Below, in pieces: positions 34,597 to 64,000 of a stretch of DNA of 64,000 nt. The notes under the pieces were generated by a model. The model was not told the origin of the DNA. It searched no databases and was given only the letters and a program-made list of their open reading frames with translations. A program made the position numbers and the translations under genes. Numbering within the stretch: the stretch's first letter is position 1; the number at the start of each line of letters is the position of its first letter. The DNA is from Phyllobates terribilis (taxonomy: Eukaryota), in the NCBI RefSeq assembly GCF_046119375.1, contig NW_027362768.1:163804001-163868000 (forward strand), in the 5' to 3' direction.

Positions 34597-34637
<41 letters not shown>

Positions 34638-37600: not shown

Positions 37601-40600
37601 GGTCCCGGGACATCCAGAACTCCTGAACTTGGGGGCTGCAGAGACGCAATAGAAGCCTGAACTTTAATTATACTGCGCATCTCATTTAATAAAGCCCCGT
37701 GCTCCTTTAGCATGAAGGCTCTACATTCAGCACAGACATTTTGTATACGAGTCGGGAAGTCTGATGTTCCAAGAGGTGCCTGGATTGTATTTTACTGTGC
37801 CCCCCACCCACCCCCGTATCCTTTTTTTCAGGAGGTGGTAATTGCCCAGAGACATCCTATAAAAAAAAAAAAATATGGAGGGTCTGGTAAGCGCAAGCTC
37901 CATTAGCCATATAAAAAGGGGTAATGGTACACTTACCCTCCCTGGATCGCCCCACAGCCATGTATCAGGGTGAGACATATCTGCCATTTTGCTGTCAGGG
38001 GTGCCCAAGCTGCAAGCCTGCCTCTGATGCTCCCCAGCCCCCCTTTTTATAACTTACCTGGTCATCCAGTCATTTTCTCCTGCTCCTTGGCGTCTGGTCT
38101 AACCGCGGTTTGAATTTCCCACACGACCGCCACCGGAAGTAGTCATCTCTGGACTTCCGGTTTCGACGCCGGGTGGTCCTGGAGCTGGGAGAAGCCGGAC
38201 CCGCCCAGAGCAGGACGCCGAGAGCCCCGGGGATGGGGAAGCGGCACCCGGAGGCTCCAGCACACCAGAGGGCTGAGGGACTCCCGACAGGGAGTGTCAG
38301 CCCAGGACCCGCTTGACGGCAGGAAGGAGAGAGCCGCGCCCACCTCCCGATCCCTTAAAGGTAAAACTTCTTCTCCAGTGCTCCTGTACTCCCTTGTCCT
38401 GTGTAGGGACCGGAAAAACACTGAGGAGGTTGGGGGTGGTAGGGCTTTTTGGGATTACTCCTCCTCCTACGGTGCGGTCATGGGGATGCACTGGAAAACG
38501 CAGCACTTCCGCAAAATAATTGCTAGTGCTGCGTTTTTTTCCGCAATGATAATCCGCAGCAGAAATTTCCGCAGCATGTGCACAGCACATGCGGATTATC
38601 ATTGGGGAACATGGCAGGCCTTCTACCATACGTTTAAGCGTTTCTGCCGCTGCGGAAACGCTTAAAAAGCGCATCGTGGGCACACAGCCTTAATGTGTTT
38701 TATAGGAGTTTGAGCCAAGGACAGTTAAAACTTTGTATGTAAACCCTTGTCCTAATGGAATTATGGATGAAGAAATTTGTTTGCTAAAAATGTATTAGAA
38801 AAATTGCTTGTATGGTGTACAAAGTAGGCCTCCTAAACAACTTGCTAAAGTTTTTTTTCCTGTAAAAAGTGGTATCACATCAAGATGATACTTGGCTCAA
38901 ACAGTTTGATCTGAGTGTCATTAGAATAATTGGCCCGATTCTCTCACATGAGAGAATCACTCGCGTGACCCCAGCTTTCGAGAAAGTATCAGAAGGAAAC
39001 AGTAGTCACCGTCACCCCTTGCTACTCTCCAGTCCTTGGACGCAAGACTTAAAAGGAAGACTTGTTCACCATTTGGAGAGTTCTCCATGATTTCTTTATC
39101 TAGTTGGTCAAAATAGGAACAGTATGTATAACAAGTGTATAAAGAAATAATATGATAACAGGTGCAAACTCAGAACTAGAACTCAGTTCTTTATAGGTTT
39201 ACTTTATCAAGTTGGGTAATACTCAAGTCTGTTGATCTGAAATCTGGAGGGGATAATTACGAGTTTTAATGACCAACTCAAGCTTATGTAAGCTTACAAC
39301 AAACTGCAGGAGTGCATTTAAAGAGTATGAAGCGAGAGCCGAGCCTCACCTGGACAGGATGTGGTTGTTCCAGCTGAGAGAACCGACACGGGATGAGTGG
39401 CTGACCATATTCCGGAGACGCTTCTGCTGCTGAACATCCCAGAGCTGAGAAAGTATAGGGAGAAATATAAGACACATTCAGACTGCCATGAAAGCAGCAA
39501 TAAGCAACAGACGTGGACTCACCTGTACTTCAGCATTGCTGGTTCCTACTGCGAGATAATTGCCCTCCTTGATCCAAGAGACAGACGACACGTACTCCTC
39601 AGAGTTCTCCATCTGGAGAAGCAGAACGATGTCTCCGCTCAGGTAGTTCCAGAGGTAAACGGAGTCATTCAGTGCTACAGCCAGCAGGTTCTGCGAGCTC
39701 CAATCAATTAGGTTCAAATCTGAAGTGAAGTTAAAGGGTTTGTCCCATCGTTAGATGTATGGCCCCCTTCTCAAACAAAAGTAATGATTTATTATTTTTT
39801 TTAAATTTTGAATGGTAAAATGAAAAAATAAAAAACTTTATAATCATTCAACTTTTAAACACTAGGGGGAGCAGCTGCCGACATTTGCCGTGATCACCTA
39901 TTGTTGTGCCAATTCACATTAGGACTGCAGTAAATGAGCCTGATCTACTCCAGGTGTCAGGTGTACTGAGAGGAGGAGAAGGGAGAATGAAGTTCAGGGC
40001 GGTTTCACACATCCGGATATTTCAGGTACCGGAGATGTCCGTGTGCACCTGTGTGCCGCATCAGGAGCACATGTACTGGTGTTTGGGAATCAGCGGTACA
40101 GTTAGCGTTGATCCCAAGCTCCGGTGCTAAAAGCTGCCCTCATCATTGTCCCTTGCTCGCGCTGTGATCAGCAAGATCAAGGGACAATGTTGGTAGTAGT
40201 CTGCTCCTGGAGTTTCTATGTGTAAAAATAAGATGTCCCCTGCTGAAATCCTCTGACCCCCGACGCTGATGAGAATGAGCCAGACCAGAAAGCGGGGCCC
40301 TGCATGGAGGTCACTGAATGATAGGACACCACTCGCTGAGCGCAGCTCCGGGCCCCGCTCGCTGGAGCTGCTCATGCTCCCCGGTGTCAGAGGATTACAT
40401 CTCCTAACAGACGACTAAGGATTTTACCATTTTATTCTTATGTTTACAAATTGGACACAGAGCAGACTACTCCCAACATTGTCCCTTGCTCGTGCTGATC
40501 ACAGCGCAAACAAGTGACAATGAGGGCAGCTTTCAGCACCAGTCGCTTGGGAACAGTGCTAACTGTATGCCGGTTCCCAGGCACCAATACGTGTCACAAT

Positions 40601-43600
40601 GACGACACACAGATGTCACCCTTGTGTGTTCAGCGTGAGACCTTTTGCGGCCTGTGCAGCATATACACCGCGTGCAGAATTATTAGGCAAATGCGTATTT
40701 TGATCACTTTGATACTTTATACATGTTGTCCTACTCCAAGCTGCATAGGCTTGAGAGCCAACTACCAATTAAGTAAATCTGGTGATGTGCATCTCTGTAA
40801 TGAGGAGGGGTGTTGTCTAATGACATCAACACCCTATATAAGGTGTGCTTAATTATTAGGCAACTTCCTTTCCTTTGGCAAAATGGGTCAGAAGAGAGAT
40901 TTGACGGGCTCTGAAAAGTCTAAAATTGTGAGATGTCTTGCAGAGGGATGCAGCAGTCTTGAAATTTCCAAACTTTTGAAGCGTGATCACCGAACAATCA
41001 AGCGTTTCATGGCAAATAGCCGACAGGGTTGCAAGAAGCGTGTTGGCCAAAAAAGGCGCAAAATAACTGCCCATGAATTGAGGAAAATCAAGCGTGAAGT
41101 TGCCAAGATGCCATTCGCCACCAGTTTTGCCATATTTCAGAGCGGCAACGTTACTGGAGTACCAAAAAGCACAAGGTGTGCGATACTCAGGGACATGGCC
41201 AAGGTAAGGAAGGCTGAAAAACGACCACTTTTGAAAAAGAAACATAAGATAAAATGTCAAGAATGGGTCAATAAATATCTTAAGACTGATTTTTCAAAGG
41301 TTTTATGGACTGATGAAATGAGAGTGACTCTTGATGGGCCAGATGGATGGACCAGAGGCTGGATCAGTAAAGGGCAGAGAGCTCCACTCCGACTCAGACA
41401 CCAGCAAGGTGGAGGTGGGTTACTGGTATGGGATGGTATCATCAAAGATGAACTTGTGGGACCTTTTCGGGTTGAGGATGGAGTGAAGCTCAACTTCCCA
41501 GACCTACTGTCAGTTTCTGGAAGACAACTTCTTCAAGCAGTGGTACAGGAAGAAGTCCGTATCGTTCAAGAAAAACATGATTTTCATGCAGGACAATGCT
41601 CCATCACATGCATACAACTACTCCACAGCGTGGCTGGCCAGTAAAGGTCTCAAAGGAGAAAAAATAATGACATGGCCCCCCTTGTTCACCTGATCTGAAC
41701 CCCATAGAGAACCTGTGGTCCATCATAAAGTGTGAGATCTACAGAGAGGGAAAACAGTACACCTCTCGGAGCAGTGTCTGGGAGGCTGTGGTGGCTGCTG
41801 CACGCAATGTTGATCGAAAACAGATCAAGCAATTGACAATTTATGGACGGAGGCTGCTGAGTGTCATCATAAAGAAAGGTGGCTATAATGATCACTAGTT
41901 TTTTTGGTTTTGCATGTTAGAAATGTTTATTTCTAAATTTTGTGCACTGATATTGGTTTACCTGGTGAAAATAAACAAGTGAGATGGGATTATATTTGTT
42001 TTTTTATTACGTTGCCTAATAATTCTGCACAGTAATAGTTACCTGCACAACCAGATATCCTCCTAAGATAGCCAAATCTAAAAAAAAAAAAACCACTCCA
42101 ACTTCCAAAAATATTAAGCTTGGATATTTATGAGTCTTTTCGGTTGATTGAGAACGTAGATGTTGATCAATAATAAAAATAATCCTGCACACAGTATGTG
42201 CGTGTGCGTATAACATACATACTGTATGTCAGCGTATTTTGCCCAGACACGGTCCGTGGAAACACACTGACATGTGCACATAGATTTGAATGGGTTTCCG
42301 TGTGTCAGTGTCTCCAGTACATGTGGAAACTGTCACCACAAGAACTGGACACTGAAGTGTGAAGAGCCCTTAGGATCACACAGCAGCGCCAGTTTGTAGT
42401 CAACTTCAATGTGATACCAAGATGAGGCCAAACACCGAGGACAGGCGGCAGTGCAGATTTTGATACATGGCACGGAACCGCTCACTGGTCTTTACAGAGA
42501 TCCGAGTGAAGCAATCATATCACTGCGGCTGCAGCACTCCGATCACAGGTCAGCTGACCACACAAAAATTTATTAAATTAAACGTCTATGCAGGCCAATA
42601 CTCTGGAATCGATACATAGCTGAGTGCATCACACATCATGGATTAGATACACAGCTGAGCTGACAACTATTGTGATCTGAGTGCAGCAGTCTTGTCACTG
42701 CATCTGCGGTGCTCAGAAAAAGGTAATCATCTGTGCGCATGGGTCCAGACACCAGAGCTGCAGCAATGATTTTGTCCAGAGAGGTGTACTCCCTGCTGGA
42801 TGAAGTCACCACTGCCGCTGCATTGGAGCGACTTTGCAGACGCAGCAGTAAAGCCTCAGAAAGCACGGATGTCTGAATGAGGCTTCACATGGATTAGGCT
42901 CCGCACAGTCAATGTTCAAAACACAGCAGTGTAACCATTTCACCACTATGCTTTGAACACTAGCACTGACAGTGGTGGCGAGCACAGGTCAGGCAGTCTG
43001 ACCAAGTGTTCCTACAATGTTGCTGACCTGGTCTCTCCACCGCAGCCTTGCTCTTACTGCAGGACTAGAGGCAACTTCTACCAGCGGTGAGAACAGATTG
43101 GTGGTACAATGCCAGGATGCCCGATCGGTGCTCACTTCTGCAGTAATTGTGCTCCTGTCACCGCTGAACACTGCGCGAGCGGCAATAGGTGAAAACTGTA
43201 GCCTCAACTACAGCTGTTAACTAGACAGCCCAGAGGAAGGGGGGAGTTACCAGTTCACAGTATGAAAGATGCGGTGGGACACCAAACAGTCTCCTATGGC
43301 TGCAGTATACAAGTATCATGCTCCGACACTTACACACCACTAAATAAAATAAAAAAGTAGCCCCCAGCAGCTGCAGAAAAAATAAAGAAAGTTGAAAAGT
43401 AAATTGTCTAAAAATAAGTGATAACTAAAGCTTGTAAAGCTCCTTCAGATAGCCTCCCCAGGTCTTAAGTACTAAACTTACAGTAATCATTCCTGATCTC
43501 AGGAGCGTCGAGGACTCTGTCGGGCATGGAGGGGATGTATCGGCTGGCCTTTTTGCAGGATCCAGGAGTTGTTTTCTGACTGTACAGAACCTTCAAGTTG

Positions 43601-46597
43601 TTCTGGTAACCTGAAAAGGAAAAGATTTAATAAAAAGCCAAAACAAAGAAACAACTAAAGTTGAAAGGGGTTCTGCCCCTCCCCCCCTCCCAAATCTAAT
43701 CCCCAATTTCTGGCATGGATTTTTAGAGGGAACCAGTCAGCAGGTTGTCACAATAAAAAACAAAACAAAAAAAAAACTAAGGCCACCACTTTTAATACCT
43801 TTCATATCAGTCTAGCAACCTGTATACAAGTCCCCAGCCTCCTCTGCACTACCCCCCCCCCCCCAAAAAAAAACCCCACTTATAATTCCCCAACATACAG
43901 TGGGGTCTGATGGGTGTCGCTGATCTTGCTCAGTGACTCATCTCTCCCCACAATAGTCGTGTTCCTGCCTTGCTCCATGTGGATGACGTATCCTACGTCA
44001 TCCCCTCAGTGTCCCCAATCTGGCTCCTGCGCAGGTGTACCTCACACTGCTGAGAGTGTAATTGGCATGTGCCAGGAGAGGTCAACATTACAGGGCTTTG
44101 CTCAGCAGTGCAGAGCGGAGTACGCCTGTACAGGAACGAGATTGGGGGACACTGTGTATGACACGTCCTGCTCATCTACACAGCAGGGCAGGAGGACGGC
44201 GACCGACACGAGGAGGAGCTGAGCAAGATCAGAAACCACAGACTGGAGCGCACCACATGGGGACGATTATAAACTGTATTTTTTGGGATATGCAGAGGGG
44301 GTTGAGGACTTCTATACAGGTTGCTAAACTAATAAAAGGCATTAAAAAAGTGGTAGTCTTCGTTTATATTGGGGAAACCCTGGAGACCGGTTCCTTTTAA
44401 AGGGTAATCAAGAGAATCCAAAGAATCAAATTTTCTTTATTAGCGATTCAAGTTTTGATTTGGGTTAAAGGGGTTTTCCAGTCAGATCTCACAAACCTTC
44501 AGGAGCATTGAGCGACTTTCCACCAAGACGTAAGATTTTGGCATCTTCCATATCAAACCCATTCAGGTTGACTGCCCAGGCCTTCTGCTGCTCCTGTTTA
44601 GCACATAGGATAAAAAAAGACGGGTGAGGCCAAGAACAAACGAGGGACCAAGATCTGCCATAAGGAGAGTGCTAGCACCACACCTCCTGGTGTTGAAGAA
44701 GTGCTCCCGACAAGACGTATCCCCTAAATGTGTGTAGCTGTATTAAAATACTTACTTATCGATGGCTGGTTTCCAGAACCGCTTCTCTTCTGACTCATCG
44801 GATCATGCAGGGGTTTGTGTGTGAACCACTTTAACAATGCAAATCTATGGTGCCCCCCCACCCATTTATGTAATCCCCTAGTGATACACCATACAGCCGT
44901 ATTGTCAGCAGCTTGGGGGTGTTATGGCCCCATATTATTCCTATAGAAGTCAGTGCACTGGGTCAACAATATCAGCAAATACCAATTTATTCATGTAATG
45001 GGATATTCCACTTACAATAAGTCATCACATATGGGACCACCGTTCCGCGTGAGTATAAATGCCCCCGTGCTGGGTGGTTTATCCTCTGGCTACTGTAGTA
45101 CCATAGAGAACGAATGGAGCAACGCGGCAACATGTATTTACGGCTGATTTATGCAGACGAAGAACAAAAGAATCCTGTTCTGGAGATTAGTGGTGGTGGG
45201 ATCTCTGGTCGGATGCCCACCGATCTAGACAATCACCTAATCTGGGGCTCTGGTCTTCTGTCCTGGTGACTGCAATATTAGGGGGACGACTAACTAGTAA
45301 CCATAATTTACGGTGCTTTGGGGTATATTACCTATATACCATTACATATTTTCAGTGCACTTTCTTCCATTGAGACCTATATTTTTGTCACATTATGTAA
45401 TACATTACACACATATAACTCCGGTATTGTTTCTGGTTGTAGTCCTTCTTAATCATATGCGCATCTCCTCCACCCCCCCCCACCCCCCAAAAAAAAACCT
45501 CTTGGCTAATTGCTATACATTGATTTGGAGTGACAGCCACCCCCATTCTTGGACCATAATATGGTGTAGGTGGACTCACTGCAAAAATGTACCTAGTGAA
45601 TATATTGCTATTTATCACCTATTCTGTAGACATGCGATACATCCAATTACCGGAAAACCCCTTCAAAGTCCACGAGATCCCCAGTAACAACAACAACAAA
45701 AAAAAAAAAGTGGCAGACGCAATAATCACCTTTTTTGTGGGGGACTGGTCAGTCGGCTCATTCTCCTTAGTGAGCAGGAAGCTGGCCACATCCATCTGCA
45801 TGGCACTGCGGTTGGGAATAAAGCGATCGCCTCCAGCTCGTGACGGCGTACCCTGCAGCTTCCCCTGCGATTTGCCTGGACAGACAATTTGCTGTTACAG
45901 TTAGCAGATAAACCTCCAAAGCCGGCCAAACACATCAGATTAGATGGCGGTAAGCCTAGCAATGCTGATGGCAGACAATCGTCAGAAGCAATCTCTCCCA
46001 TACACAGGAGCGTTTGTTCCTTCTGAGAAAGTCACCGACTAACATCCCCCGGCAGCTTATCTCTGGGAGAACAAAGATAGACAGTCCGAAAACAGATATG
46101 TCCGATCGTTCTCTTCCCTGACGATCAAAATGGCCAGCGCACCATACATGTTACACCCCCAGCCGAACCCATCGATATCAGTCTAATCTGTACGAGATGG
46201 GTGGGGGGGCTCAGTTCTGCCCATTAAGTGAATAAATCAAATAAATTTGCAAAAGCATCTCTGCAGAAAGTGAACAAGCAGGGAGTGCTGGGGGCTTTCA
46301 GATGGTAAAGATGCAGAATTGCGACTGCACAAACATCTGATTGATGTCCTAATATTCATGAGGGGGTGCCCAGTATAGAGAAGCCGCACCTGGGGTTTTT
46401 GATGGCGTCTTGCTGGAGCTGTGGGATCGGTTTGCCGCCTTCATAGGAGACACGATACTGGAGTTCACCGACGTGTTTGCTGACGAGCAGGCTCCCTCCT
46501 TCGCCTTGCGCTGCCATCGCGCCAGCGGAGCGTTTGTGATCGGCGTATCCAGCTTTAGAATGCTGTTCAGGTCGTTCTCAAACACAAATTGTGCCAT
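29379..46597 (-). CDS. CDC20: Cell division cycle 20 (fizzy), APC/C co-activator; complement(join(46390-46597,45730-45875,44497-44593,43482-43610,39523-39719,39350-39444,31184-31415,29821-29946,29633-29750,29379-29554)), 1524 nt, 507 aa
   Basis: Ten GT-AG-bounded exons in frame. [17 protein letters not shown]..., C-box DRFIPNR, KEN box (LTKENE), Mad2-interacting KILR, RYIPS, WD40 repeats ([60 protein letters not shown]) and the C-terminal IR tail. Confidence 0.98.
30293..31156 (-). mobile_element. Internally deleted Tc1 remnant in CDC20 intron
   Basis: CACTGCTCAAA terminus (minus) at 31156. Fragments [21 protein letters not shown]-like and LNPIGHIWD. Confidence 0.75.
32060..32540 (-). mobile_element. 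Fragmented Tc1 transposase remnant (boundaries approximate)
   Basis: Degenerate Tc1 coding segments (ARKKPLL-, GGSIMLW- and [10 protein letters not shown]-like). Confidence 0.5.
32975..38690. mobile_element. Host MITE of the DIRS element (AGGCTATGTGCCCACGATGC ... GCATCGTGGGCACACAGCCT)
   Basis: Matching terminal inverted repeats. The two halves align to a second copy at about 47810-48363 in CDC20 intron 1. Confidence 0.8.
33352..38497 (-). mobile_element. DIRS1-type tyrosine-recombinase retrotransposon, decayed, with ITRs and ICR, in the CDC20 intron between coding exons 6 and 7
   Basis: Inverted terminal repeats at about 33352-33485 and 38380-38497. Internal complementary region at about 33575-33665 complementary to both ends. 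gag remnants at 37.7-36.6 kb, RT/RH at 36.3-35.0 kb, methyltransferase remnant ([19 protein letters not shown]) at about 34.9 kb, YR with AHSTRA...CKHY at 33.9-33.7 kb. Confidence 0.92.
39996..42370. mobile_element. Fold-back MITE of the same family, split by the Tc1 at 40666-42194
   Basis: AGGGC..TTTCACAC / GTGTGAAGAGCCCT ends. Co-linear with 1-914. Confidence 0.8.
40666..42194 (+). mobile_element. Tc1-family transposon with long IR/DR-type ends and a frameshifted transposase (40883-41898), inserted in a MITE in CDC20 intron
   Basis: TA-flanked ends ..GTGCAGAATTATTAGGCAA, with internal copies at about 40848 and 42012. MGQKRDLT...WTDEMR...FMQDNAPSH...[11 protein letters not shown] with frameshifts near 41497 and 41680. 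Confidence 0.92.
43727..44400. mobile_element. T2-type MITE with internal inverted arms, in CDC20 intron
   Basis: AGGGAACCAGTC / GACCGGTTCCTTTTAA ends. Inverted arms at about 43790-43850 and 44290-44355. Confidence 0.6.
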
Positions 46598-54669: not shown

Positions 54670-55125
54670 AATCAATAACTTTAAAAAGGAGAAAAAATGA
54701 GTGTTGCGGCATAAAAAACATTTTATTTAATCAAGATTACATAACGGCAAGTACAAAAAGATTACATAACATAATAAGAGATATAAAGTGCAAGGTGCCA
54801 GATGTTAGGGGGGGTCACATGAATAATGAGTCATGCAAGTTATGCGGGTATAGATGCATCACTATAGATGTAAAAGATGGGCGTTCAGACATATATCAGA
54901 AAGGTTATGTGGGGATAGATACTCAATAGTATACTGCTCAGTGCTAGTAAAGGGCTCTGAAGCCCGAACATGTAGATAAACTCCTTATGGTAGTGATCCC
55001 ACCCCTCTGAGATTAATAATGTCCCCTATAAGACTCACCCAGGAGTGACCCACCGATCGGTCTGATGATGATAGTGACAACGCGCCCCGACGCGCGTTTC
55101 GCCAGTCTTTTTCAAGAGGCGCAAT
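54670..55125 (-). mobile_element. Penelope-like pLTR remnant (boundaries approximate)
   Basis: HHR motif at its 5' end, then an AT-rich body with AATAAA near 54725. No ORF. Confidence 0.45.
55082..55122 (-). ncRNA. Minimal hammerhead ribozyme motif, U3-A8 variant (PLE type)
   Basis: GCGCCTC-TTGAAAA-A-GactggC-GAAA-CGCGCG-TC-GGGGCGC: 7-bp stem I (one G-U), palindromic ACGCGCGT stem III, GUC triplet, very short stem II. Confidence 0.6.
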
Positions 55126-55142
55126 CAGGATACTGTATGAGG

Positions 55143-55377
55143 TTTATTATGACAATGACATCATTTTTTAATCCGTTTATTAAAAAAATAGCATATCTTA
55201 CGGTCTTTCGTTTTAGTTAGACATAGACATAAAATACCATATAAACAGCATATAAATATGTTGCGTAAAAAAAGCATCCAAACAACAAATCTGGTCCTAT
55301 GGACATCTAGAGATGGAGGCAGAGGAGAGGCAGCGTCGTATACATCAGCTCAGGCGGCAGTCTTCCCTAGGAAATAG
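55143..55377 (-). other. Candidate non-coding 3'-terminal exon of the mucin gene with two AATAAA signals
   Basis: Long pyrimidine tract and TTTCCAG acceptor (55378). Upstream donor GAATG|GTGAGT at 57095/57094. AATAAA on minus at 55181-55176 and 55148-55143. Confidence 0.5.
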
Positions 55378-56489
55378 CTGGAAATCAAAGCAACTAAAAC
55401 CCAAACAAATAAAAAAGGGAGAAAAAAAAACATTATCAGTCATGTCACACACTCCTTATTACGGTGAATACTGAAACCCCATGAATAGTGCAAAACCTCC
55501 ACCAGTTATACCTGTTATCTGCACAGGGATGATAGTTGTAGCTTAATATGAAGGTAAACTTAAAGGGGTTGCCTAGTACCAAACTATTAGTGAGCTACCC
55601 GTAGGATAGGTCATCGATATGCTATCAGTGGAGGAGGAGCTGTGTCAGTATTCACGCTTATGTATGGACTCATCTCCGGAAAGGCATTGTGGTGGTAGGG
55701 GCAATACAGCAGAGCTGACAGTGCTATGAGAGGAGGAGAGCTGATAAAAGGGTTTGTAATGTGACACAGCTAAACACAGCTGTGCTGCCCCTTCTTCCAC
55801 ATGGGCCTTATCTGAAAGAAGTTAGTCATCTGTGCACTAATCTCCCAGCACTTTCCAATTGAGATCAGAGCTGTATCATTACATCTCACACATCAAGAAA
55901 CCTAAACTTTGGTGGGGGCGTGTTCTTTTTTCTGCTGTGTTGTTGCCTGTTTATGATTGGGCAACTCGTACAGGGAGACAAAGTACACACCCCCAGTGAA
56001 ATATATCTGATAACACCCACTTAGATTTAACAAAAGTTAACTAATTAGGTGTGAAATACTTTGATTGCTAATATCTCTGCAACAGAGAGGCAAAATTAAA
56101 AAAAAAATAGTATTATTCCACTCTGTAGCCACCCACTATTACAGCCTGTGACCAGGTCTAAATTAAAAAAATGGTGAAAGATCCTCTTTAATTAAATATG
56201 TATATTTTATAAAAAAAAATGTTTTTTTAAAAAAGTATTTTTTATATATTTTTACTTTATTATTTAGTCCCCATAGGGGATATGACTCTATAATAAACAT
56301 TTGATCACTTTGTACCATATACTGCAATACAGTGTTGCAGGATATATTAGTAATCATGATCTCCTAGGGTTCATAAGAGTTCAAAGATGGCAGTGATGGG
56401 GGCTACCAGCTGTTCTGGTAATTCATTGGCTTCAATTTAAAAATTGTATTCTTAATAGGACAACCCCTTGTTTGTTTTCTTTTTGTTTT

Positions 56490-56930
56490 TAAACAATAAT
56501 GGATTCCCCTTTATTACAATGAGTAATGTTTTTAAGTGATATACTCCATTATGCTTTATGATTGTATTGTGTGTGCTTTACGGTGTATACATGCGTTTAA
56601 GTCTGATTCCCCACCCACTAGGCATGGTGTTTTTTCGAAGGGAGGCGTCTCTGTGTGCATTCTTTCGCTATAAACAACAGACCCTGTATCTGTATGTGTA
56701 TAGACTGTCCTGAGGAAGTGGTGTCATCACTACCAAACACGTAGAAATAAAGTCTATTTCACCATTACATTGACTTGGATTCCTCTGGTACATTATTCTG
56801 CCAGGCGAGCAGCGCATTTTGATGCCCCACTCTCTTTACGCAATAAAGGATCATTGCTTCGGAGTTTGCAGCAGCCGCCAATGCTAAGTACAGTGGTTGT
56901 GTCTCACACAACCCTAATAGGTGAGTGAAT
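56490..56930 (+). mobile_element. Penelope-like pLTR remnant (boundaries approximate)
   Basis: Contains the degenerate HHR and two AATAAA signals. No ORF. Confidence 0.4.
56708..56745 (+). ncRNA. Degenerate PLE hammerhead motif (G12C, probably inactive)
   Basis: TC-CTGAGGA-A-GTGGTG-tcat-CACTAC-CAAA-CACG-TA-GA followed by AATAAA. GAAA is changed to CAAA. Confidence 0.5.
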
Positions 56931-57120
56931 TTGAATTATCTTTCACGAATATTCATTTTATCTCGGATAACACCCTCTGTGCCCTCTATATTCCTTCTAG
57001 TTACCTTTTAAAATGAAGAAATTACCCTGAGGCTTGTTGTTCCCTCCTGGGATATCCTTGCACTTGGCTTTCTAATAACCTTTTTTTTACTCACCATTCC
57101 TCCAACTGTCTGTGATCTCT

Positions 57121-60100
57121 TCACACATTCAAGTCCCCATTGATATTCACTATGGAGTTAAAAAAGTTGGTTTGCAAAGCCTGGAGGATGGAGGGAACAA
57201 TATGTCACTAAAGAGAGTAGTGATAATCCTGTATCAAGGGAATTTGCACCTAATAATACATTTTGGAACTATCTTTCTTGGCAGTTGGACCTCCCCTAGC
57301 CGTTGGCAGATATTTAGTAGTATACCTTGTGCAACAATTAGGAGGAATACTGCATGAGTGATGCAAGTGAAAAAGAAAAGCAGAGAATGCCTGCGTCACA
57401 GCTAGCTGGAAGTGAGGGTGAGCAGCACTCACTAAATTTGGTAGAATATAAGCCCAGAAGGGCAGAGTCCTCTCCTTTCTGTACCAGTCTGTCATTGTTA
57501 GTTTGTTCCCTATCATTTCTATATGTGTTTTGTATGTAACCCCTTCTCATGTGCAGCACCATGGAATCAATTGTGCTCTAAAAATAAATAATAATATTTG
57601 CTGCGCTACCCAAGGACCTTAGAGAGGCCACCAAAGAGAGTAGAAGAAAGTTCCAGCCTCTGCTGCAAGGGAGACCCATCCACATGTAGTCCCGCCATTG
57701 CACAGAGAAAGACGATTGCCATCACGGAGGTGAACGATGGGACTTATTCCTGTGAGTGAAGAGTTCATCAACCAACAGAATAATTGGCCTCTCATAAGGG
57801 ACAAAGAGGTAACCACACATTGTCTGTTGCTTCTGCTCTGTCTCCTGTGTACTCTGAATTCTTTCTGCCATCCTCTTGTTGGGAAACCATCTCTTCCACC
57901 AAGGACTATTGCATACAATTTTTAATGGATCTCATCTATACCCAACCATATAGGCCTCTAGAATGGATTTCCTAGAGCCTGGAAACCCCACTTTGAAACA
58001 TTAAATTAATTAAAATAATTCCTATGTGCCACTCAGGGGAGTTGCTGCCATTTTGACCCTCCAAAGGCAAATAATGGTAGTAATGTGGAAATGCTGAAAA
58101 TGCAGGACCGGAAACACAGCAGCTGGGTCCCCGGACGGATTGATCACCAACGGATCATGGCTATTACAACTATATTAGTACAGTAAAACTTACTATTTAA
58201 AGCTGCTTTAGCTATGTTTTTTTGTAAATATGTTCATTGTTATAAGACTGATATTCATTTTACATTATGGGTTTATATACTGTAATAACATACACACCAA
58301 GCAGATTCCTGCAGGGATGAGGACCACGGCCGCCACCATCAAGCCAATAAGTACGCTGCCGTACACGGGGATAGTCCCATCTATTCCAGCGAGGCCTGCG
58401 CAAAACCAAAAGTTTATTAGCAAAGATGGGTCAGTGAGAAAGTGCAGAATATGATATACTTAGTAAAGGGGTATATCAGTCTGTAGAGCTGGGAGACCCA
58501 TTGATCCTTATATCTGGGTCCTAAGTCCTCCATTCCTTCTCACTAAAGTAAGTACTCTCATGTGCGTCTAAAACTGGAGCTGCAGTGCACATGCTTTACC
58601 ACTGCTCCAAAGAAGCTTCTTCTCACAGCGGAGTTTGGACCCCTGTTCTAGTGATCAGTGGGGGTCCAGTAAACATCCCTGATATAATATGATTGATATG
58701 GTAAAGTGCAATTTCACTGTAAAATATAACCATTTCTTTGCAAGGTGATTTGGCATATTTCGGGTCTCCAGAGCCGCTCCGGTCCTCTTTTGGGTCAGCT
58801 GACGGCTATTTCGACTTGCCAAAGCACACTTGGCTCTAAAAGTCACTTTTACAATGTAAGTCTATGTAGTGTCAGAACAAGGCTCCATACTCTTAGGGTA
58901 TTCTACTTGTTATGCAGCATCAAAACTGCAGCGACCAGCTGTTACAAAATAGTAGATGGGATTTGTAGAAATCCTATGTCCACTATGTGTCTGTGGCTCA
59001 CCCGCAGAAACTGACATGTGGCGCGTCTTTCCAGACCGCAGCATGTCAATTTCTCCGGCGGTTCTTCATGTGGGCTTTTCCCATAGACCTAACCTCTATG
59101 AGGAAAGTCCACAGGTGAAAAAAAAATGGCGCTGATCATTTGCATAAAATGAGTGGAAGCCGGCCGTACCTGCTGTGGCTGCTGTTGTCAGTGTTTCTGT
59201 AAGTTCAGAAGCAAAAGGGAAAAAAAGCACAAAAAGTCTTACTAACAGGCTGTTGGTTTCCAGAAATTGCCATCTACATATCCATAACCATATACTGAAT
59301 GTTGAGGTCACTTGGACATTACTTAGGCTGTATTTGTTAGAAAGCTTAAAAAGGGTTGGATACAGTCCTACGAGACCTCAGGGCATCGTACACATCTCTT
59401 CAGGACAATTGGAAGCTTTTGATTACTTTCCATTTGTGGTGAATCGATTCCCTTGCCAATCGAATTATCTGCCGAATTTTCAAAACTAAATAAAATTTCA
59501 AAAGATTCGCTCATCACTACAAATGTATATGGCTATAACACGTACATTTATAGAGAGGGATACAATCTGCTATATAAACAAACCTATAGAACCAGGAAGC
59601 TTGCTGCTACTTCTGTATCTTACCATAGCGTTACTGTACTGATCGGCTTCATGTAGATGGTTATTATGACTCGGCTTCAGCATTGCCTCTCTTTTAAATG
59701 GTCCATGTTTACATTATATAATTTTGTTGTATTAAAGGGAATCTGTCACCAGGATTTTGCTATCCCATCTGATAGTGGCATGATGTAGGGGCAGAGACCC
59801 TGATTCCAGCGATGTGCCTCTTACTGGGCTGCTTGTAGTTTTGATAAAATCCCTGCATTATCTGCTGAAGATCTAGCAGTTCTCTGAATGCTGAGCTCTG
59901 TATAACCCCGCCCACAACACTGATTGGCATCTTTCTGTGTACACTGTGCATAGGCAGAAAGCTGCCAATCAGTGGTGGGAGCAGGATTATACGGGACAAG
60001 TTGATTAGAAAGCACAAGACATCTAGTCCTTTAGCGATAATCTCCTGATAAAACATTGATATTCTCAAAATTACATCAAGCAGCCCAGTAAGTGATACAT

Positions 60101-63100
60101 CGCTGACCCTACATGATGCTGGTCTCAGATAAGGTGACACAAATCTGGTGACAGATTCCCTTTAACATTGAATACATGTAGAATTAAAGTACAAATACTG
60201 TAGATAAATATTTCAAATTCAGTGTTTACAAATAAATAACTAACAACAAATTAAATCTAAAATAAAAAAGTAATAAACAGAAAAATGTATAAATGATCTG
60301 TTATAAATATGACACAAAATAATACAAAATGTAAAAAAATGCAAGCATTCAACGACAGAATAATAACACATACTGACACATGTAAATATCCATAATTATT
60401 GAAACGAACAGATGTAAAAATCAAAACCATCAATAAGAATCGAAGTAATTTACAAGTCGTGGAGCTCAGTAATGACTGTATCAACCCCTGATATCTCACC
60501 TGCAGATGTGGTGTTGACAGGAAACAACAACTGTAGTTCTTCCATCATTTCTCCATTCTTTTTTACCACCTCTAAAAATGTACTCTGCAGATTCTCACTA
60601 GATGGCGCCACTGAGCTATTTGGAAACACGGCTACATTTTCAGTCTTCACCGAGCCTTTTCTGGGGGAGAGAAACAACTGTTGTCACTGAGGACTCATTT
60701 CTACTTCTCTAAAATATTTGCCTCCCTAACATCACTTATTCACTGATAGTTAAAAAGCAGAACCCAAATTGGTGACCAGATGACCGAGACCAAGGAAATG
60801 GCCATTATTAACTTACGTGAATCCAGTTATTGCCACAGATTGACAGGAAGGATGAATTATTCTTATCACCGGGAATACCTGTATTTAAGATACAACAGAG
60901 GACATTAGTAATGTCAGGCCATAGAATACAGAATGTCAGCCATAAATCATAGATGTTATTTTGCCCCTGACATGGTGCAGAACCATTTAGCTTCGTGATA
61001 TAATAGTGCGACAATGATTGTAGACTCACCAGCGCTTCAATCCTTTTCTTTAGCTCGATATAATAAGGATCAGATGAATTTAAAAGTCTTTCATCAAACT
61101 CCATATTCAGAATTGTGAAGGAGAACTTTACATAACTTAGGGAGGGAGTCTCAGCAGATACAGGAGCAGCAGTTGTGATTCCTGTAGTTATGGGAGCAGC
61201 AGATGTTTTTAGAGTTCCTGTAGTTATCCAGGGAGCAATTGTCAGTGTTCCTGATGTGATAGGAGTAGCAATTGTTGGCAAGTTTCCTGTACTTGTAGGA
61301 TCAGGAGCTGTTGTTTTCAGTGTCGCTGTAGCCACCTGCTTAGCTGTAGTCGAGGTCCTTGTAGTTTCTGAAACAGCAGATGTTGTGAGTGTTCCTAAAG
61401 TTGTAGGAGAAGCAGTTGTCCACTTTTCTGTAGATACGGCTGCTGTAGCTGTTCTCAGTATTTCTGCAGGTTTGGGAGTAGCTGTTGCCTTTGTTAATGC
61501 AGTTACAGGAGCAGCAGCACTTTTCAGTGTCCCTGTAGTAGCAGCAGCAGTTGTCAGTATTTTTGCAGTTATGGGAGCTGTAGTTGTTGGCGTTCCATTT
61601 GTTGTGTTCACAGAAGTTGTCTTAAGTATTTCTGTAGTTAGAGCAGCAGTGTTCTGTGTGTCTATAGTCGTAGGAGAAGATGATGTCAGTGTTTCTCTAT
61701 GTATGGCAACAGCAACTGAGAGTTTTTCTGTATGTTTTGGAGCAGCAGATGTCAGCGTCTCTGTAAATATAGGAGCAGCAGTTGTCAGTGTTTCTATAGT
61801 TTTAGGAGCCACAGTTGTCAGTCTTTCTGTAATTCTTTGACCTGCAATTGATATCAGTGTTTTTGCAGTTGTAGAAGCAACAGTTGTCAGTGTTTCTTTA
61901 GCTATAGGATCAGTTGTTATCGGTGGTTCTGTAGTTATAGGAAAAATCGATGTTAGTGGTCCTGTACTTATGGGAGCAGCAGTTGTCAGTGTTTCTGTAT
62001 TTATAGCAGCAGCAGATGTCATTGTTTCTGTTGATATGGGAGAAGCAGGTGTCACATTTTCTTTACTATTGAGGGCAGCAGTTGTAACTCTTTCTTTAAT
62101 TATGGGAATAGCAGTTATCACAGTTTTTGTAGTTGTTGGTGCACTATTTGTCAGTGTTTCAGAAGTAATCAGTGCGGCAGTTGTCACTGCTTCTGTAGTT
62201 ATGGCATTAGCAGTTGTCACAGTTTCTGTATTTATTAGAGCAGGTGTTGTCATTGTTTCTGTAGTTATGGAAGCAGCAATTGTCAGTATTTCTGTCTTAA
62301 TGGGATTAACAGTTGTCACTGCTACTGTAGTTATGGGAACAGCAGCTGTCACTGTCTCTCTAGTTTTAGGAGCAGCATTTGTCAGTGTTTCTATATTTAT
62401 GGGAACAGCAGTTGTCACCTTATCTGTAGTTATGGGAACAGCAGTTGTCACTGCATTTGTAGTTATGGGAACAACAGTTGTCTCTCTCACTGTAGTTTTG
62501 GGAGCAGCAGCAAATATTGTTAATTTTTCTGCAGTTATGGTAACATCAGATATTGTCACTATTTCTGTTGTATTGGAAGCAGCAGTTATTGTTTTTTTAG
62601 TTACAGAAGCAGCAGTTGTCAACGATTCTGCAGTTATTGGAGTAACTGATGTCACTGTTTCTGTTGCAGTGGGAGCAGAAGTTGTCAGTGTTTCTTTAGT
62701 TTCGAGAGTAGTAGTTGTCACTGTATTTTTAGTATTGGGAGCAGCAATTGACACTGTTTTTGTAGTTATGGGAGAAATTTTCCCCTTTTTTTTAGTTATA
62801 GGAATAGCAGTTGTAACTGCTTCGGTAGTCTTAGTGCCTAGACTTGTTAGCCTAGTTTCTATACGTATGGGAACAGTAGTTGTCACTGTTTCTGTAGTTA
62901 TGGCAATATCTGTTTTCACTAGTTCTGTAGTTTTGATAGCTGCAGATGTTGTCACTGTTTCTGTAGTTGAGGGAGCAGTAGTGGTCAGTGTTTCTGTAGT
63001 ACCAGGAGCAGCAGTTGGCATTGCTTCTGTGTTTAGTGGAACAGCTGTTTTCATTACTTCTGTAGTTATGGCAGCAGCAGTTGTCAGTGTTTCTGTAGTA

Positions 63101-64000
63101 ATGGGATTAGTCAATGTCATTGTTTCTGTAGTTATTGGAAAATCAGTTTTTACTATTTCTGTAGTTATGGGAGCAGCAGTTTTCACTGTTTTTATAGTTA
63201 TGGGAGCAACATTTGTTACCTCTTTTTCTGCAGCATTTGTTACGTCTTTTTCTGTAGTTTTGGCACCAGCACTTGTCATTGTTTCTGTACTTATGGGAAC
63301 CGCAGTTTTCATTGTTTCTGTAGTTGTGAGAGCCGCAGTTGTTATCTCTTTTTCTGTAGTTATGGGAGCAGCAGTTGTCAGTGTTTCTGTAGTAATGAGA
63401 GCAGTAGTTGTCTCTCTATCTGCAGTTATGGAAATAGTAACAGATGTCAGTGTTTCTGAAATATCGGAAACAGCAGTTGTAATTTCTTCTGCAGTTACAG
63501 GAGCAGCAGTTGTCTCCGTTTCTGTTGTATGGAAAACGGCAGTTGTCAGTGTTTCTTTAGTTATGGGAGCAGCAGTTGTCACAGTTTTTAGAGTATTGGG
63601 AGCAGCAGTTGCCACTGGTTCTATAGTTATTGGAACAGCTGGTTTCTCTTGTTCAGTAGTTATGTCAGCAGCAGTTGTCAGTGTTTCTGTAGTTATGGGA
63701 ACAAGAGTTGTGACTGTTTTTTTAGTTATGGGAGCAGCACTTGTCAGAGTTTCTGTGATTATGAGAATAGGAGTTGTATCCGCTTCGGTAATTTTGGAAC
63801 CAGCGCTTACTGTCATTCTTTCTATTCTTATGGGAGCAGCAGTTGTCACTGTTTCTCTTGTATTGGGAGCAGCAGTTGTCAGTGTATCTTTAGTTACAGG
63901 AGCAGCAGTTGTAACTGGTTCTGTAGTTATTGGAGAAGCAGTGCTCACAGTTTCTGTGTTTATGGCAGCATCAGTTGTCTCTGCTTCTGGAGTTATTGGA
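57121..64000 (-). CDS. Transmembrane SEA-domain mucin with MUC1-like architecture, 5' end beyond the window; exons >64000-61030, 60878-60817, 60660-60500, 58395-58298 and tentatively 57180-57121 (stop)
   Basis: About 2.97 kb of stop-free Thr-rich 11-aa repeats ending in a SEA N-half (YVKFSFTILNMEFDERLLNSSDPYYIELKKRIEAL|gtgagt). Then a 62-nt exon (VFPVIRIIHPSCQSVAITGF-T), a 161-nt exon (KGSVKTENVAVF...VNTTSA-G) and a 98-nt TM exon (LAGIDGTIPVYGSVLIGLMVAAVVLIPAGICL). All are GT-AG with compatible phases 0/2/1/0. The tail exon is less certain. Confidence 0.85.
59736..60161. mobile_element. T2/Kolobok-type MITE with TTAA TSD, in a mucin intron
   Basis: TTAA-AGGGAATCTGTCACCAG ... CTGGTGACAGATTCCCT-TTAA. 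Confidence 0.85.
61140..64000 (-). repeat. Coding degenerate 33-bp tandem repeat (consensus peptide TTAAPITTETL), roughly 85-90 units in the window
   Basis: The plus strand shows recurring GGAGCAGCAGTTGTCAGTGTTTCTGTAGTTATG. Units are diverged but the frame is preserved. Confidence 0.95.

What the first reader, a model, noticed from the sequence alone, without database searches (positions are those of the whole stretch)
57121..64000. Frog transmembrane mucin with MUC1-type exon/phase architecture (PTS repeats-SEA-TM, no EGF)
Seen: a giant repeat exon ends mid-SEA at phase 0, followed by a 62-nt exon (phase 0 to 2), a 161-nt exon starting just before GSV (2 to 1) and a 98-nt TM exon (1 to 0) with the motif IPVYGSVLI. 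Recalled: human MUC1 has the same phase series (56, 137, 122 nt), the intron falls in the residue before xGSVVV, and its TM opens VPGWGIALL. MUC1 is usually described as mammal-specific, and MUC3/12/13/17 carry EGF domains that are absent between SEA and TM here. Inference: this is either an amphibian member of a MUC1-like lineage or an independent gene built from the same SEA-TM exon module. Automated annotation would probably label it only 'mucin-like'.
Basis: partly seen in the sequence, partly recalled or inferred. Interest (0 to 1): 0.75.

Follow-up and report, generated by a model that had tools for sequence, protein, structure and literature searches.

The report
Frog SEA membrane mucin, not MUC1
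This is a real, expressed frog gene for a sugar-coated membrane protein (long Thr-rich repeat, one SEA domain, membrane anchor, very short tail); its closest relatives are frog-specific repeat-plus-SEA mucins built from the same exons, so it is an ordinary new member of the SEA mucins and not a frog MUC1.

Summary
On the minus strand, a Thr-rich exon with an 11-residue repeat (at least 990 codons, running off the window) ends in phase 0 inside a SEA domain. Exons of 62, 161 and 98 nt follow, all with GT-AG borders. Spliced contigs from four public runs join them exactly as predicted, with no EGF exon between SEA and the membrane anchor.

New here: an 86-nt exon adds only ALQTNFFNSIVNINGDLNV and a stop, and a 3'UTR exon follows.

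The MUC1 reading is not supported:
- The tail is about 17 residues and lacks the MUC1 tail motifs.
- The gene sits just upstream of CDC20 and an ELO-family gene, not at the TRIM46-MUC1-THBS3 locus.
- A search of 1.84 billion proteins found only frog relatives. One is a collinear ortholog in Anomaloglossus ("uncharacterized protein"). The others are Eleutherodactylus proteins of alternating SEA and PTS (Pro/Thr/Ser-rich) segments.
- The Eleutherodactylus SEA cassettes have the same exon module (phase-0 break, 62-nt exon, 158-nt exon), so that pattern does not identify MUC1.

Sequence profiles and fold searches confirm a SEA domain but cannot place it nearer MUC1 than MUC16. Verdict: a lineage-specific anuran SEA-type membrane mucin, a new member of a known kind. 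Two earlier notes in this scan describe the related giant cassette mucin about 680 kb away.

The parts
61138..64000 (-). PTS (mucin) part of the giant exon A. It consists of 11-residue Thr/Ala/Pro/Ile-rich repeats of the TTETLTTAAPI type and runs off the window end.
   Evidence: Open frame of 990 codons. Tandem Repeats Finder periods of 33, 66 and 99 nt. Self-identity 0.36 at lag 11; Thr 31%.
61030..61137 (-). End of exon A, which is the start of the SEA domain (SYVKFSFTILNMEFDERLLNSSDPYYIELKKRIEAL). It ends in phase 0 before GTGAGT.
   Evidence: Pfam SEA positions 2-35, E = 2.4e-4. 70% identical to P0003 residues 109-148. The contig X2 record 9 joins it to exon B.
60817..60878 (-). Exon B, 62 nt, phase 0 to 2, middle of the SEA domain (VFPVIRIIHPSCQSVAITGF plus two bases of a Thr codon).
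   Evidence: AG/GT borders. 55% identical to P0003 residues 149-168. Its length fits the 60-nt gap in X2 record 9. The Eleutherodactylus cassettes have an exon of the same size.
60500..60660 (-). Exon C, 161 nt, phase 2 to 1. It encodes the rest of the SEA domain, with the candidate self-cleavage motif G|SVKT and two N-glycosylation sequons.
   Evidence: Present in the spliced contigs of all four runs. 75% identical to P0003 and 62% to the Eleutherodactylus cassettes.
59170..59196 (-). Candidate 27-nt PTS micro-exon, (E)TLTTAATA, phase 1 to 1, with AG/GT borders. The contigs do not use it.
   Evidence: Sequence read. The contigs join C directly to D. The ortholog P0003 has a 24-residue linker beginning ETLAIAAT at this position.
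58298..58395 (-). Exon D, 98 nt, phase 1 to 0. It encodes the juxtamembrane stretch and the membrane-spanning helix (IPVYGSVLIGLMVAAVVLIPAGICL).
   Evidence: Spliced contigs. 89% identical to P0003 residues 246-272. Mean Kyte-Doolittle hydropathy 2.3.
57095..57180 (-). Exon E, 86 nt. It encodes the end of the helix and the short tail ALQTNFFNSIVNINGDLNV, with the stop codon at 57123-57121. The rest is 3'UTR.
   Evidence: Spliced contigs X3 record 13 and X4 record 18. 74% identical to the C-terminus of P0003.
54844..55393 (-). Exon F, 3'UTR. It starts at 55393. The contigs continue at least 257 nt below 55101, the end of the stretch that was laid, so the true end was not mapped.
   Evidence: X4 record 18 and X1 record 1. 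Acceptor site TTTTAG|TTGC.
29379..46597 (-). Neighbouring gene CDC20, downstream of the mucin on the same strand.
   Evidence: Exon 1 matches human CDC20 residues 1-64, E = 1.9e-18. Three other exons match the Pfam CDC20/Fizzy WD40 family.
15348..19143 (+). Neighbouring ELO-family gene (ELOVL1 by position), convergent with CDC20.
   Evidence: Pfam ELO, E = 2e-12 and 9e-6.

Best explanation
This is the 3' part of a lineage-specific anuran SEA-type transmembrane mucin. It is orthologous to Anomaloglossus baeobatrachus LOC142249508 and paralogous to the frog mucin-like proteins made of alternating PTS and SEA cassettes. It is not a MUC1 ortholog.

The protein is type I. From outside to inside it has:
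- a long O-glycosylated Thr-rich rod (at least 954 residues of 11-residue repeats; the N-terminus is outside the window);
- one SEA domain;
- a single membrane helix;
- a cytoplasmic tail of about 17 residues, ending in a conserved ...NGDLNV.

Proposed mechanism (inferred): like other SEA mucins, the domain cleaves itself at G|SVKT in the beta2-beta3 turn while folding. The mucin rod then stays attached without a covalent bond and can be pulled off under force, which spares the membrane. The gene would thus build a shed-able glycocalyx. The short tail argues against MUC1-type signalling. Its hydrophobic-x-hydrophobic C-terminus (L-N-V) could be a class II PDZ ligand, which is speculation.

Shown here: the exons, the splicing, expression, SEA membership, the orthology and paralogy, and the neighbouring genes.
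Inferred: glycosylation, self-cleavage, shedding and the role of the tail.
For: Gene structure and expression:
- Spliced contigs from four runs confirm exons A-B-C-D-E-F and the early stop.

SEA domain:
- Exon A matches the start of Pfam SEA (E = 2.4e-4).
- The full domain of the ortholog P0003 scores 32.1 bits, above the Pfam cut-off of 26.4.
- An AlphaFold2 model of the P0003 SEA region (pLDDT 73) has seven Foldseek matches at E <= 0.001, and all seven are SEA domains. The best TM-score is 0.78, to mouse MUC16 1ivz. ESM Atlas matches are SEA domains with TM-scores of 0.72-0.82.
- The invariant Gly64-Ser65 lie between strands 53-62 and 66-75 of that model.

Relatives:
- Exon C, searched against 1.84 billion representative proteins, gave only three real hits, all from frogs. 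They are named.
- Exon-by-exon identity to P0003 is 70, 55, 75, 89 and 74%, in the same order, with the same C-terminus.
- Identity to the Eleutherodactylus SEA-PTS proteins is 55, 44-50 and 62%.
- In Eleutherodactylus locus L001, the three cassettes with all borders read show a phase-0 end after IEEL (QAI in the divergent third cassette), a 62-nt exon and a 158-nt exon (phase 2 to 1). A fourth cassette has B and C exons of the same sizes.

Context and literature:
- The neighbours are CDC20 and an ELO-family gene.
Against: - No phylogenetic tree against MUC1, MUC13, MUC16 or MUC3/12/17 could be built, because none of their sequences was available by reference.
- The joined SEA peptide of the window itself was not assembled or searched. 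Domain-level results therefore rest on the ortholog P0003.
- Among solved structures, MUC1 is nominally the best sequence match, but weakly (E = 0.04, against 0.22 for MUC16).
That would hint at a deep common origin.
- The 5' end of the gene lies outside the window, so further SEA cassettes upstream cannot be excluded.
- The Xenopus family in the literature was not shown to be the same family as the hyloid proteins found here.
Confidence: 0.75

Rival explanations
1. It is an amphibian member (ortholog or co-ortholog) of the MUC1 lineage: the same PTS-SEA-anchor gene that became mammalian MUC1, with a diverged tail and a moved locus.
For: - The domain order is PTS, SEA, membrane anchor, with no EGF, as confirmed by RNA.
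- The G|SV motif is present.
- MUC1 is nominally the top solved-structure hit for exon A (E = 0.28) and for the family profile (E = 0.04).
- The recalled MUC1 exon phases (0 to 2, 2 to 1, 1 to 0) match. This was not tested here.
Against: - The tail is about 17 residues, with none of the MUC1 tail motifs, and this short tail is conserved in the ortholog.
- The locus is next to CDC20 and an ELO-family gene, not TRIM46 and THBS3.
- The exon module is equally present in the frog multi-SEA cassettes, so it does not identify MUC1.
- The MUC1 hit is only about 2.5 bits above MUC16 and TMPRSS and covers only the first 38 residues.
- Language-model features rank a 'mucin-16-like' cluster (0.94) above the Mucin-1 clusters (0.87 and 0.83).
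- No MUC1 protein appeared among the hits of the 1.84-billion-protein search.
Confidence: 0.07
2. It is the membrane-anchored end of a MUC16-type gene, meaning a frog MUC16 ortholog or a close derivative. MUC16 has a giant PTS region, SEA modules, a membrane anchor and a short tail.
For: - Its nearest relatives are multi-SEA, PTS-alternating proteins.
- A giant [PTS-SEA] cassette mucin is noted about 680 kb away on the same chromosome (earlier notes s1-237593 and s1-237566).
- The best language-model cluster is 'mucin-16-like', 260 aa, score 0.94 with 187 shared features.
- The best single-domain structural match is the mouse MUC16 SEA (TM-score 0.78).
- The cytoplasmic tail is short, as in MUC16.
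Against: - Only one SEA domain follows at least 954 residues of PTS in the window.
- No second SEA-like exon exists elsewhere in the 64 kb.
- The tail lacks a polybasic stretch.
- Sequence similarity to solved MUC16 SEA domains is at chance level (E = 0.22 and 1.3).
- The 1p34-like neighbourhood is not the MUC16 neighbourhood. This point rests on established knowledge of the human map and was not tested in frogs.
Confidence: 0.15
3. It is a decaying or non-functional offshoot of the cassette mucins, transcribed but without a protein role.
For: - The tail is very short.
- A PTS micro-exon used in the relative is skipped here.
- Contig depth is modest, 5-16.
Against: - There is an uninterrupted 990-codon frame.
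- All splice sites are canonical.
- The stop lies 26 nt before the last junction, so nonsense-mediated decay is not expected (inference).
- The SEA, helix and tail are conserved with Anomaloglossus, at 70-89% identity in four of the five exon pieces and 55% in the 62-nt exon.
Confidence: 0.03

Closest known systems
[quoted passage not shown] Found here: Eleutherodactylus coqui XP_066451119 and XP_066451120. A family of this kind was reported for Xenopus tropicalis by Lang et al. 2007, as cited in PMC4948705.
   Same: - The SEA sequence is 55% (first exon), 44-50% (62-nt exon) and 62% (last exon) identical.
- The three-exon SEA module is identical: a phase-0 break after I-E-x-L, a 62-nt exon, and a 158/161-nt exon going from phase 2 to 1.
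- The PTS repeats are of the same type (TLTTTAAPITTG).
- GSVK is invariant.
   Different: - Those proteins repeat the cassette many times, and no membrane exon was found in the 55 kb examined.
- This gene has a single SEA domain after a very long PTS exon, plus a membrane anchor and tail.
- Identity with the Xenopus family was not tested.
MUC1 (mammalian mucin 1)
   Same: - The order is PTS repeat, one SEA domain, membrane anchor, with no EGF.
- A G|SV motif sits in the SEA hairpin.
- The large repeat exon ends inside the SEA domain.
- There is weak sequence similarity in the first strand and helix of the SEA domain (E = 0.04-0.3).
   Different: - There is no 72-residue cytoplasmic tail and no CQC/RRK juxtamembrane motif.
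- The chromosomal neighbourhood differs (CDC20 and an ELO-family gene, against TRIM46 and THBS3).
- The SEA domain is no closer to MUC1 than to other SEA families.
MUC16 (CA125)
   Same: - It has a giant PTS exon, SEA modules split over several exons with small PTS exons after them, a membrane anchor and a short tail.
- It gives the best language-model and single-chain structural matches.
   Different: - MUC16 has many SEA repeats before the anchor, most of them without the GSV motif, and a polybasic tail.
- Here one SEA domain with GSV is seen, and the sequence similarity is not significant.
MUC13 and the MUC3/MUC12/MUC17 cluster
   Same: They are SEA-type membrane mucins with a self-cleaving SEA domain. 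Frogs have members of this kind (PMC9578598).
   Different: Those carry EGF domains around the SEA domain. RNA contigs show no exon between the SEA domain and the anchor here.

Membership tests
SEA-domain transmembrane mucin (general class) | A PTS domain rich in Thr, Ser and Pro, usually repetitive and in one large exon | tested here: met
   954 residues with Thr 31% and Thr+Ser+Pro 44%, with an 11-residue period.
SEA-domain transmembrane mucin (general class) | A SEA domain (Pfam PF01390) | tested here: met
   - Exon A alone matches SEA positions 2-35, E = 2.4e-4, which is below the family cut-off.
- The full domain of the collinear ortholog P0003 scores 32.1 bits, above the cut-off of 26.4.
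- The model has a SEA fold.
- The window's joined domain was not searched.
SEA-domain transmembrane mucin (general class) | A single membrane-spanning helix on the C-terminal side of the SEA domain | tested here: met
   Exon D contains 25 hydrophobic residues with a mean hydropathy of 2.3, and it is spliced directly to the SEA exon.
SEA-domain transmembrane mucin (general class) | Self-cleavage at G|S[VI]VV | not testable with these tools
   GSVKT is present and invariant in the family, in the modelled beta2-beta3 turn. Cleavage itself needs a biochemical test.
MUC1 | A conserved cytoplasmic tail of about 72 residues with a CQC/RRK juxtamembrane motif and signalling motifs | tested here: not met
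   The tail is ALQTNFFNSIVNINGDLNV followed by a stop. It is confirmed by RNA contigs and conserved in the ortholog.
MUC1 | A locus between TRIM46 and THBS3 | tested here: not met
   The gene lies about 8 kb upstream of CDC20, with an ELO-family gene beyond it. Only 64 kb were seen, and the frog TRIM46-THBS3 interval was not examined.
MUC1 | A SEA domain that groups with MUC1 SEA domains | tested here: inconclusive
   The family profile against solved structures gives MUC1 E = 0.04, MUC16 0.22 and TMPRSS 0.28, over only 38 residues. The closest real relatives are frog cassette proteins. No tree was built.
MUC1 | One SEA domain with no EGF domain | tested here: met
   The contigs join the SEA exon C directly to the membrane exon D.
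MUC1 | The exon and phase pattern from the SEA domain to the membrane anchor | not tested
The pattern here is shared with the frog multi-SEA cassettes, so it would not identify MUC1 even if it matched.
MUC16 | Tandem array of many SEA modules before the membrane anchor | tested here: inconclusive
   One SEA domain is preceded by at least 954 PTS residues, and there is no other SEA-like exon in the window. The upstream part of the gene is outside the window.
MUC16 | A SEA domain that groups with MUC16 SEA domains | tested here: inconclusive
   The language-model cluster 'mucin-16-like' scores 0.94 and the TM-score to 1ivz is 0.78, but the sequence E-values are 0.22 and 1.3.
MUC13 / MUC3 / MUC12 / MUC17 | EGF domains flanking the SEA domain | tested here: not met
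   No exon lies between the SEA domain and the anchor in the RNA contigs. The PTS runs straight into the SEA domain within exon A.
Anuran alternating PTS-SEA cassette mucins | SEA sequence and three-exon cassette shared with known members | tested here: met
   Identity is 55-62% in the two larger SEA exon pieces and 44-50% in the 62-nt exon. The intron positions and phases are identical, with exons of 62 and 158/161 nt.
Anuran alternating PTS-SEA cassette mucins | Repetition of the cassette (several SEA domains per protein) | tested here: not met
   Only a single cassette is visible, followed by a membrane anchor. The gene is therefore a membrane-anchored relative and not a typical member.

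The most novel reading that the evidence does not exclude
The intron positions and phases shared from mid-SEA through the membrane exon would be inherited. On this reading, the gene and the frog cassette mucins are surviving non-mammalian representatives of the SEA-anchor exon module from which mammalian MUC1 (and perhaps the MUC16 repeats) was assembled. That would give MUC1, usually called mammal-specific, a traceable pre-mammalian source.
Probability: 0.15. Interest if true: 0.6.

Novelty: new member of a known kind. Interest (0 to 1): 0.3.

Why it matters
The result removes a tempting claim of a frog MUC1. It shows that the 'MUC1-type' exon and phase pattern belongs to a SEA exon module that frogs reuse many times, so the pattern cannot be used to call MUC1 orthologs.

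It also gives a transcript-verified 3' gene model for a membrane mucin that public annotation labels only 'uncharacterized'. That model includes the stop codon, the very short conserved tail and a spliced 3'UTR exon. The gene is linked to the anuran PTS-SEA cassette mucins.

For mucin evolution, this is a useful data point on how membrane-tethered and secreted SEA mucins are built from the same exons. It is not a surprise to specialists, who already count several SEA-type membrane mucins in Xenopus.

Tried and rejected
- **Word search, SEA start of the window ORF.** Nothing found among proteins of 585-1860 aa.
- **Word searches with P0003 and P0002.** Each found only itself or its partner. Longer or shorter relatives were not visible to this tool.
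- **Exons B, C and D alone against Pfam.** No SEA hit.
- **Exon C alone against solved structures.** Nothing.
- **The P0003 SEA region as a single sequence against solved structures.** Only chance hits.
- **P0004 from the large search.** A repetitive helix-turn-helix-like protein, taken as a chance match.
- **Locus of P0003.** No DNA was served, so synteny and exon structure in Anomaloglossus could not be read.
- **Membrane exon in Eleutherodactylus locus L001.** None found.
- **Candidate 27-nt exon at 59196-59170.** Not used in the contigs.
- **Copies of the ortholog's 24-residue linker, or extra SEA exons, in the window.** None.
- **Rfam at gathering threshold over 54000-64000.** No hit.
- **Literature.** Searches for MUC1 exon sizes, SEA intron phases and MUC1 synteny in frogs gave nothing usable. 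Lang 2007 (PMC2042186) is not held.
- **Left out by the operators' rule.** The joined SEA-plus-anchor peptide of the window was neither assembled nor searched. Each exon was searched by reference, and the database ortholog P0003 served as a proxy for the whole domain.
- **Not possible.** A SEA tree with MUC1, MUC13, MUC16 and MUC3/17, because none of their sequences was available by reference.


Full report
**What is there.** The feature lies on the minus strand.
- From the window end (64000) down to 61030 there is one open frame of 990 codons.
- Its first 954 residues are a mucin-type PTS (Pro/Thr/Ser-rich) domain. Thr is 31% and Thr+Ser+Pro is 44%.
- The repeat is 11 residues (33 nt). It is seen by Tandem Repeats Finder and as 36% self-identity at lag 11, against about 12% background.
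- The last 36 residues (SYVKFSFTILNMEFDERLLNSSDPYYIELKKRIEAL) begin a SEA domain. Pfam SEA positions 2-35 match with E = 2.4e-4.
- The exon ends in phase 0 before GTGAGT.

| Exon | Coordinates | Length | Phase | Content |
|---|---|---|---|---|
| B | 60878-60817 | 62 nt | 0 to 2 | middle of SEA |
| C | 60660-60500 | 161 nt | 2 to 1 | one base completing a Thr codon, then KGSVKTEN... |
| D | 58395-58298 | 98 nt | 1 to 0 | ...IPVYGSVLIGLMVAAVVLIPAGICL |

All borders are canonical AG/GT.

**Transcript evidence.**
- The index found four runs from one study that hold parts of the stretch.
- Their contigs, laid on 55101-61100, are spliced and have no mismatches in the exons.
- X2 record 9 joins A, B, C and D. 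X1 record 1, X3 record 13 and X4 record 18 join C, D, a further exon E, and a last exon F.
- The one- or two-base offsets in the listed pieces come from bases shared at the junctions. The piece lengths add up to my exon lengths.
- The junctions are therefore real, and nothing lies between the SEA domain and the membrane exon, so there is no EGF exon.
- Exon E (57180-57095, 86 nt) reads ALQTNFFNSIVNINGDLNV and then a stop at 57123-57121. That is 26 nt before the last junction.
- Exon F starts at 55393 and is 3'UTR. The contigs run at least 257 nt beyond 55101.
- The cytoplasmic tail is thus only about 17 residues.
- A tempting 27-nt PTS micro-exon (59196-59170, ETLTTAATA, phase 1 to 1, good splice sites) is not used in these contigs.

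**Relatives.**
- A word search with the SEA start found nothing in its length range. I therefore used the one large search, with exon C alone (collected).
- Among 1.84 billion representative proteins, only three real hits appeared (sequences, names).
- P0003 is Anomaloglossus baeobatrachus 'uncharacterized protein LOC142249508' (291 aa).
- P0001 and P0002 are Eleutherodactylus coqui 'uncharacterized proteins' made of alternating SEA and PTS segments.
- Exon-by-exon BLAST (exons never joined) shows that P0003 is a collinear ortholog.
  - Identity is 70% (end of A), 55% (B), 75% (C), 89% (D) and 74% (E).
  - The C-terminus is the same (...NFFNSIINSNGDLNV).
  - P0003 has 24 extra PTS-like residues between the SEA domain and the helix, at the place of our unused micro-exon.
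- The Eleutherodactylus cassettes are 55%, 44-50% and 62% identical to our three SEA exon pieces.

**The exon module is not specific to MUC1.**
- In Eleutherodactylus locus L001 I mapped the cassettes by tblastn and read the borders.
- In the three cassettes with all borders read, the PTS exon ends in phase 0 after ...KIEEL (...VQAI in the divergent third cassette), before GTGAGT.
- A 62-nt exon follows, and then a 158-nt exon that starts with one base completing a codon, followed by EGSVKV (RGSVKT in the third), and ends in phase 1. A fourth cassette has B and C exons of the same sizes.
- These are the same intron positions and phases as here (62 and 161 nt).
- Two earlier notes of this scan (s1-237593, s1-237566) describe a giant [PTS-SEA] three-exon cassette mucin with a 62-nt SEA micro-exon about 680 kb away in this genome. 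I could not read that DNA, but it fits.
- From my own memory (not tested), the human MUC16 repeat units are also split into a first exon, a short exon of about 23 codons, an exon of about 58 codons, and small PTS exons.

**Is it a SEA domain, and which kind?**
The ortholog P0003 served as a proxy.
- Its SEA domain passes the Pfam cut-off (32.1 against 26.4 bits).
- A profile of the database family members (A2) finds SEA domains among solved structures, which take the five best places, and every hit is weak: MUC1 E = 0.04, mouse MUC16 0.22, a TMPRSS 0.28, TMPRSS11D 0.63 and MUC16 1.3. Two chance hits rank among them. The MUC1 and TMPRSS alignments cover about 38 residues.
- An AlphaFold2 model (pLDDT 73) has the SEA beta-alpha-beta-beta-alpha layout. 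The invariant Gly-Ser sits in the turn between strands 53-62 and 66-75, which is where MUC1 cleaves itself.
- The seven Foldseek matches at E <= 0.001 are all SEA domains: TMPRSS6, MUC16 and mouse MUC16 (TM-score 0.78). MUC1 is deposited as two chains and cannot compete there.
- The ESM Atlas shape search gives generic SEA matches with TM-scores of 0.72-0.82.
- Language-model features, which are a lead only, rank a 'mucin-16-like' cluster first (0.94) and the Mucin-1 clusters lower (0.87 and 0.83). For P0001, 'Mucin-16 (Fragment)' scores 0.85 against 0.78 for 'mucin-1'.
- None of this places the domain in MUC1.

**Neighbourhood.**
- CDC20 lies downstream on the same strand, from 46597 to about 29379. 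Exon 1 matches human CDC20 residues 1-64 with E = 1.9e-18, and three exons match the CDC20/Fizzy WD40 family.
- An ELO-family gene lies on the plus strand at 15.3-19.1 kb.
- This matches the human MPL-CDC20-ELOVL1 arrangement on 1p34 (established knowledge). It is not the TRIM46-MUC1-THBS3 locus on 1q22.

**Mechanism.**
- Shown: the gene is expressed and spliced. It encodes a PTS rod, one SEA domain, one membrane helix and a very short conserved tail.
- Inferred from what is established for SEA mucins (Macao et al. 2006, cited in PMC1552070): heavy O-glycosylation of the rod, and self-cleavage at G|SVKT during folding. The outer subunit would stay bound without a covalent link and could be released under force.
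- The tail has no MUC1-like motifs, so a barrier or glycocalyx role is more likely than signalling.
- The conserved C-terminal L-N-V could be a class II PDZ ligand. This is speculation.

**Comparison and novelty.**
- SEA-type membrane mucins in frogs are on record. Xenopus tropicalis has seven such genes (PMC9578598) and a family with alternating SEA and PTS domains (PMC4948705, citing Lang 2007).
- MUC1 outside mammals remains unproven. The chicken candidate was judged unconvincing (PMC1552070).
- This gene is a new, unnamed member of the SEA mucins. It is related to the anuran cassette family and detectable so far only in hyloid frogs.
- I put the MUC1-lineage reading at about 7%.
- A deeper shared origin of the SEA-anchor exon module with MUC1 is possible, at about 15%, but it cannot be tested with the sequences available here.

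Noticed in passing
window 59170-59196 (-): A 27-nt PTS-like micro-exon candidate, (E)TLTTAATA, in phase 1 to 1 with AG/GT borders. It lies in the intron between the SEA and membrane exons. The contigs of four runs skip it, while the Anomaloglossus ortholog carries a 24-residue linker beginning ETLAIAAT at that position. It may be an alternative or a vestigial exon.
   Followed up: partly
window 59737-60166: An element of about 430 bp with inverted ends (aaagggaatctgtcaccag... / ...ctggtgacagattcccttt) inside the mucin intron. The RNA contigs pile up on it at summed depths of 8,000-31,000, with many rearranged joints. It looks like a very high-copy, transcribed MITE-like repeat.
   Followed up: partly
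window 55082-55181 and 54844-55393 (-): The stretch that another note (s1-221022) calls a hammerhead just past a distal polyA signal lies inside the spliced 3'UTR exon F. The contigs run through it and continue at least 257 nt below 55101, so transcripts do not all end at the AATAAA at 55181-55176. Rfam gives no hit at gathering score anywhere in 54000-64000. CDC20 is on the same strand as the mucin (in tandem), not facing it.
   Followed up: partly
window 55321: All four runs read G where the assembly has A, in the 3'UTR exon. This is most likely a polymorphism between the sequenced animals and the assembly.
   Followed up: no
window 52217-53338 (+) and 40883-41644 (+): ORFs that look like Tc1/mariner transposase fragments. 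One lies between the mucin and CDC20, the other inside a CDC20 intron.
   Followed up: no
window 10681-11913 and 16782-17197: Two long tandem arrays. The first is a GC-rich 39-nt unit repeated 33 times, upstream of the ELO-family gene. The second is a 33-nt unit repeated 13 times at 98% identity, inside that gene.
   Followed up: no
L001 41503-44884 (Eleutherodactylus coqui CM069420.1): The third SEA cassette of the Eleutherodactylus gene is much more divergent than its neighbours. Its first exon is 41% and its last exon 51% identical to the sister cassettes, which are nearly identical to one another. Its 62-nt exon, however, stays 85-95% identical to theirs at protein level. The evolution among cassettes is uneven, recalling note s1-237566.
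   Followed up: no
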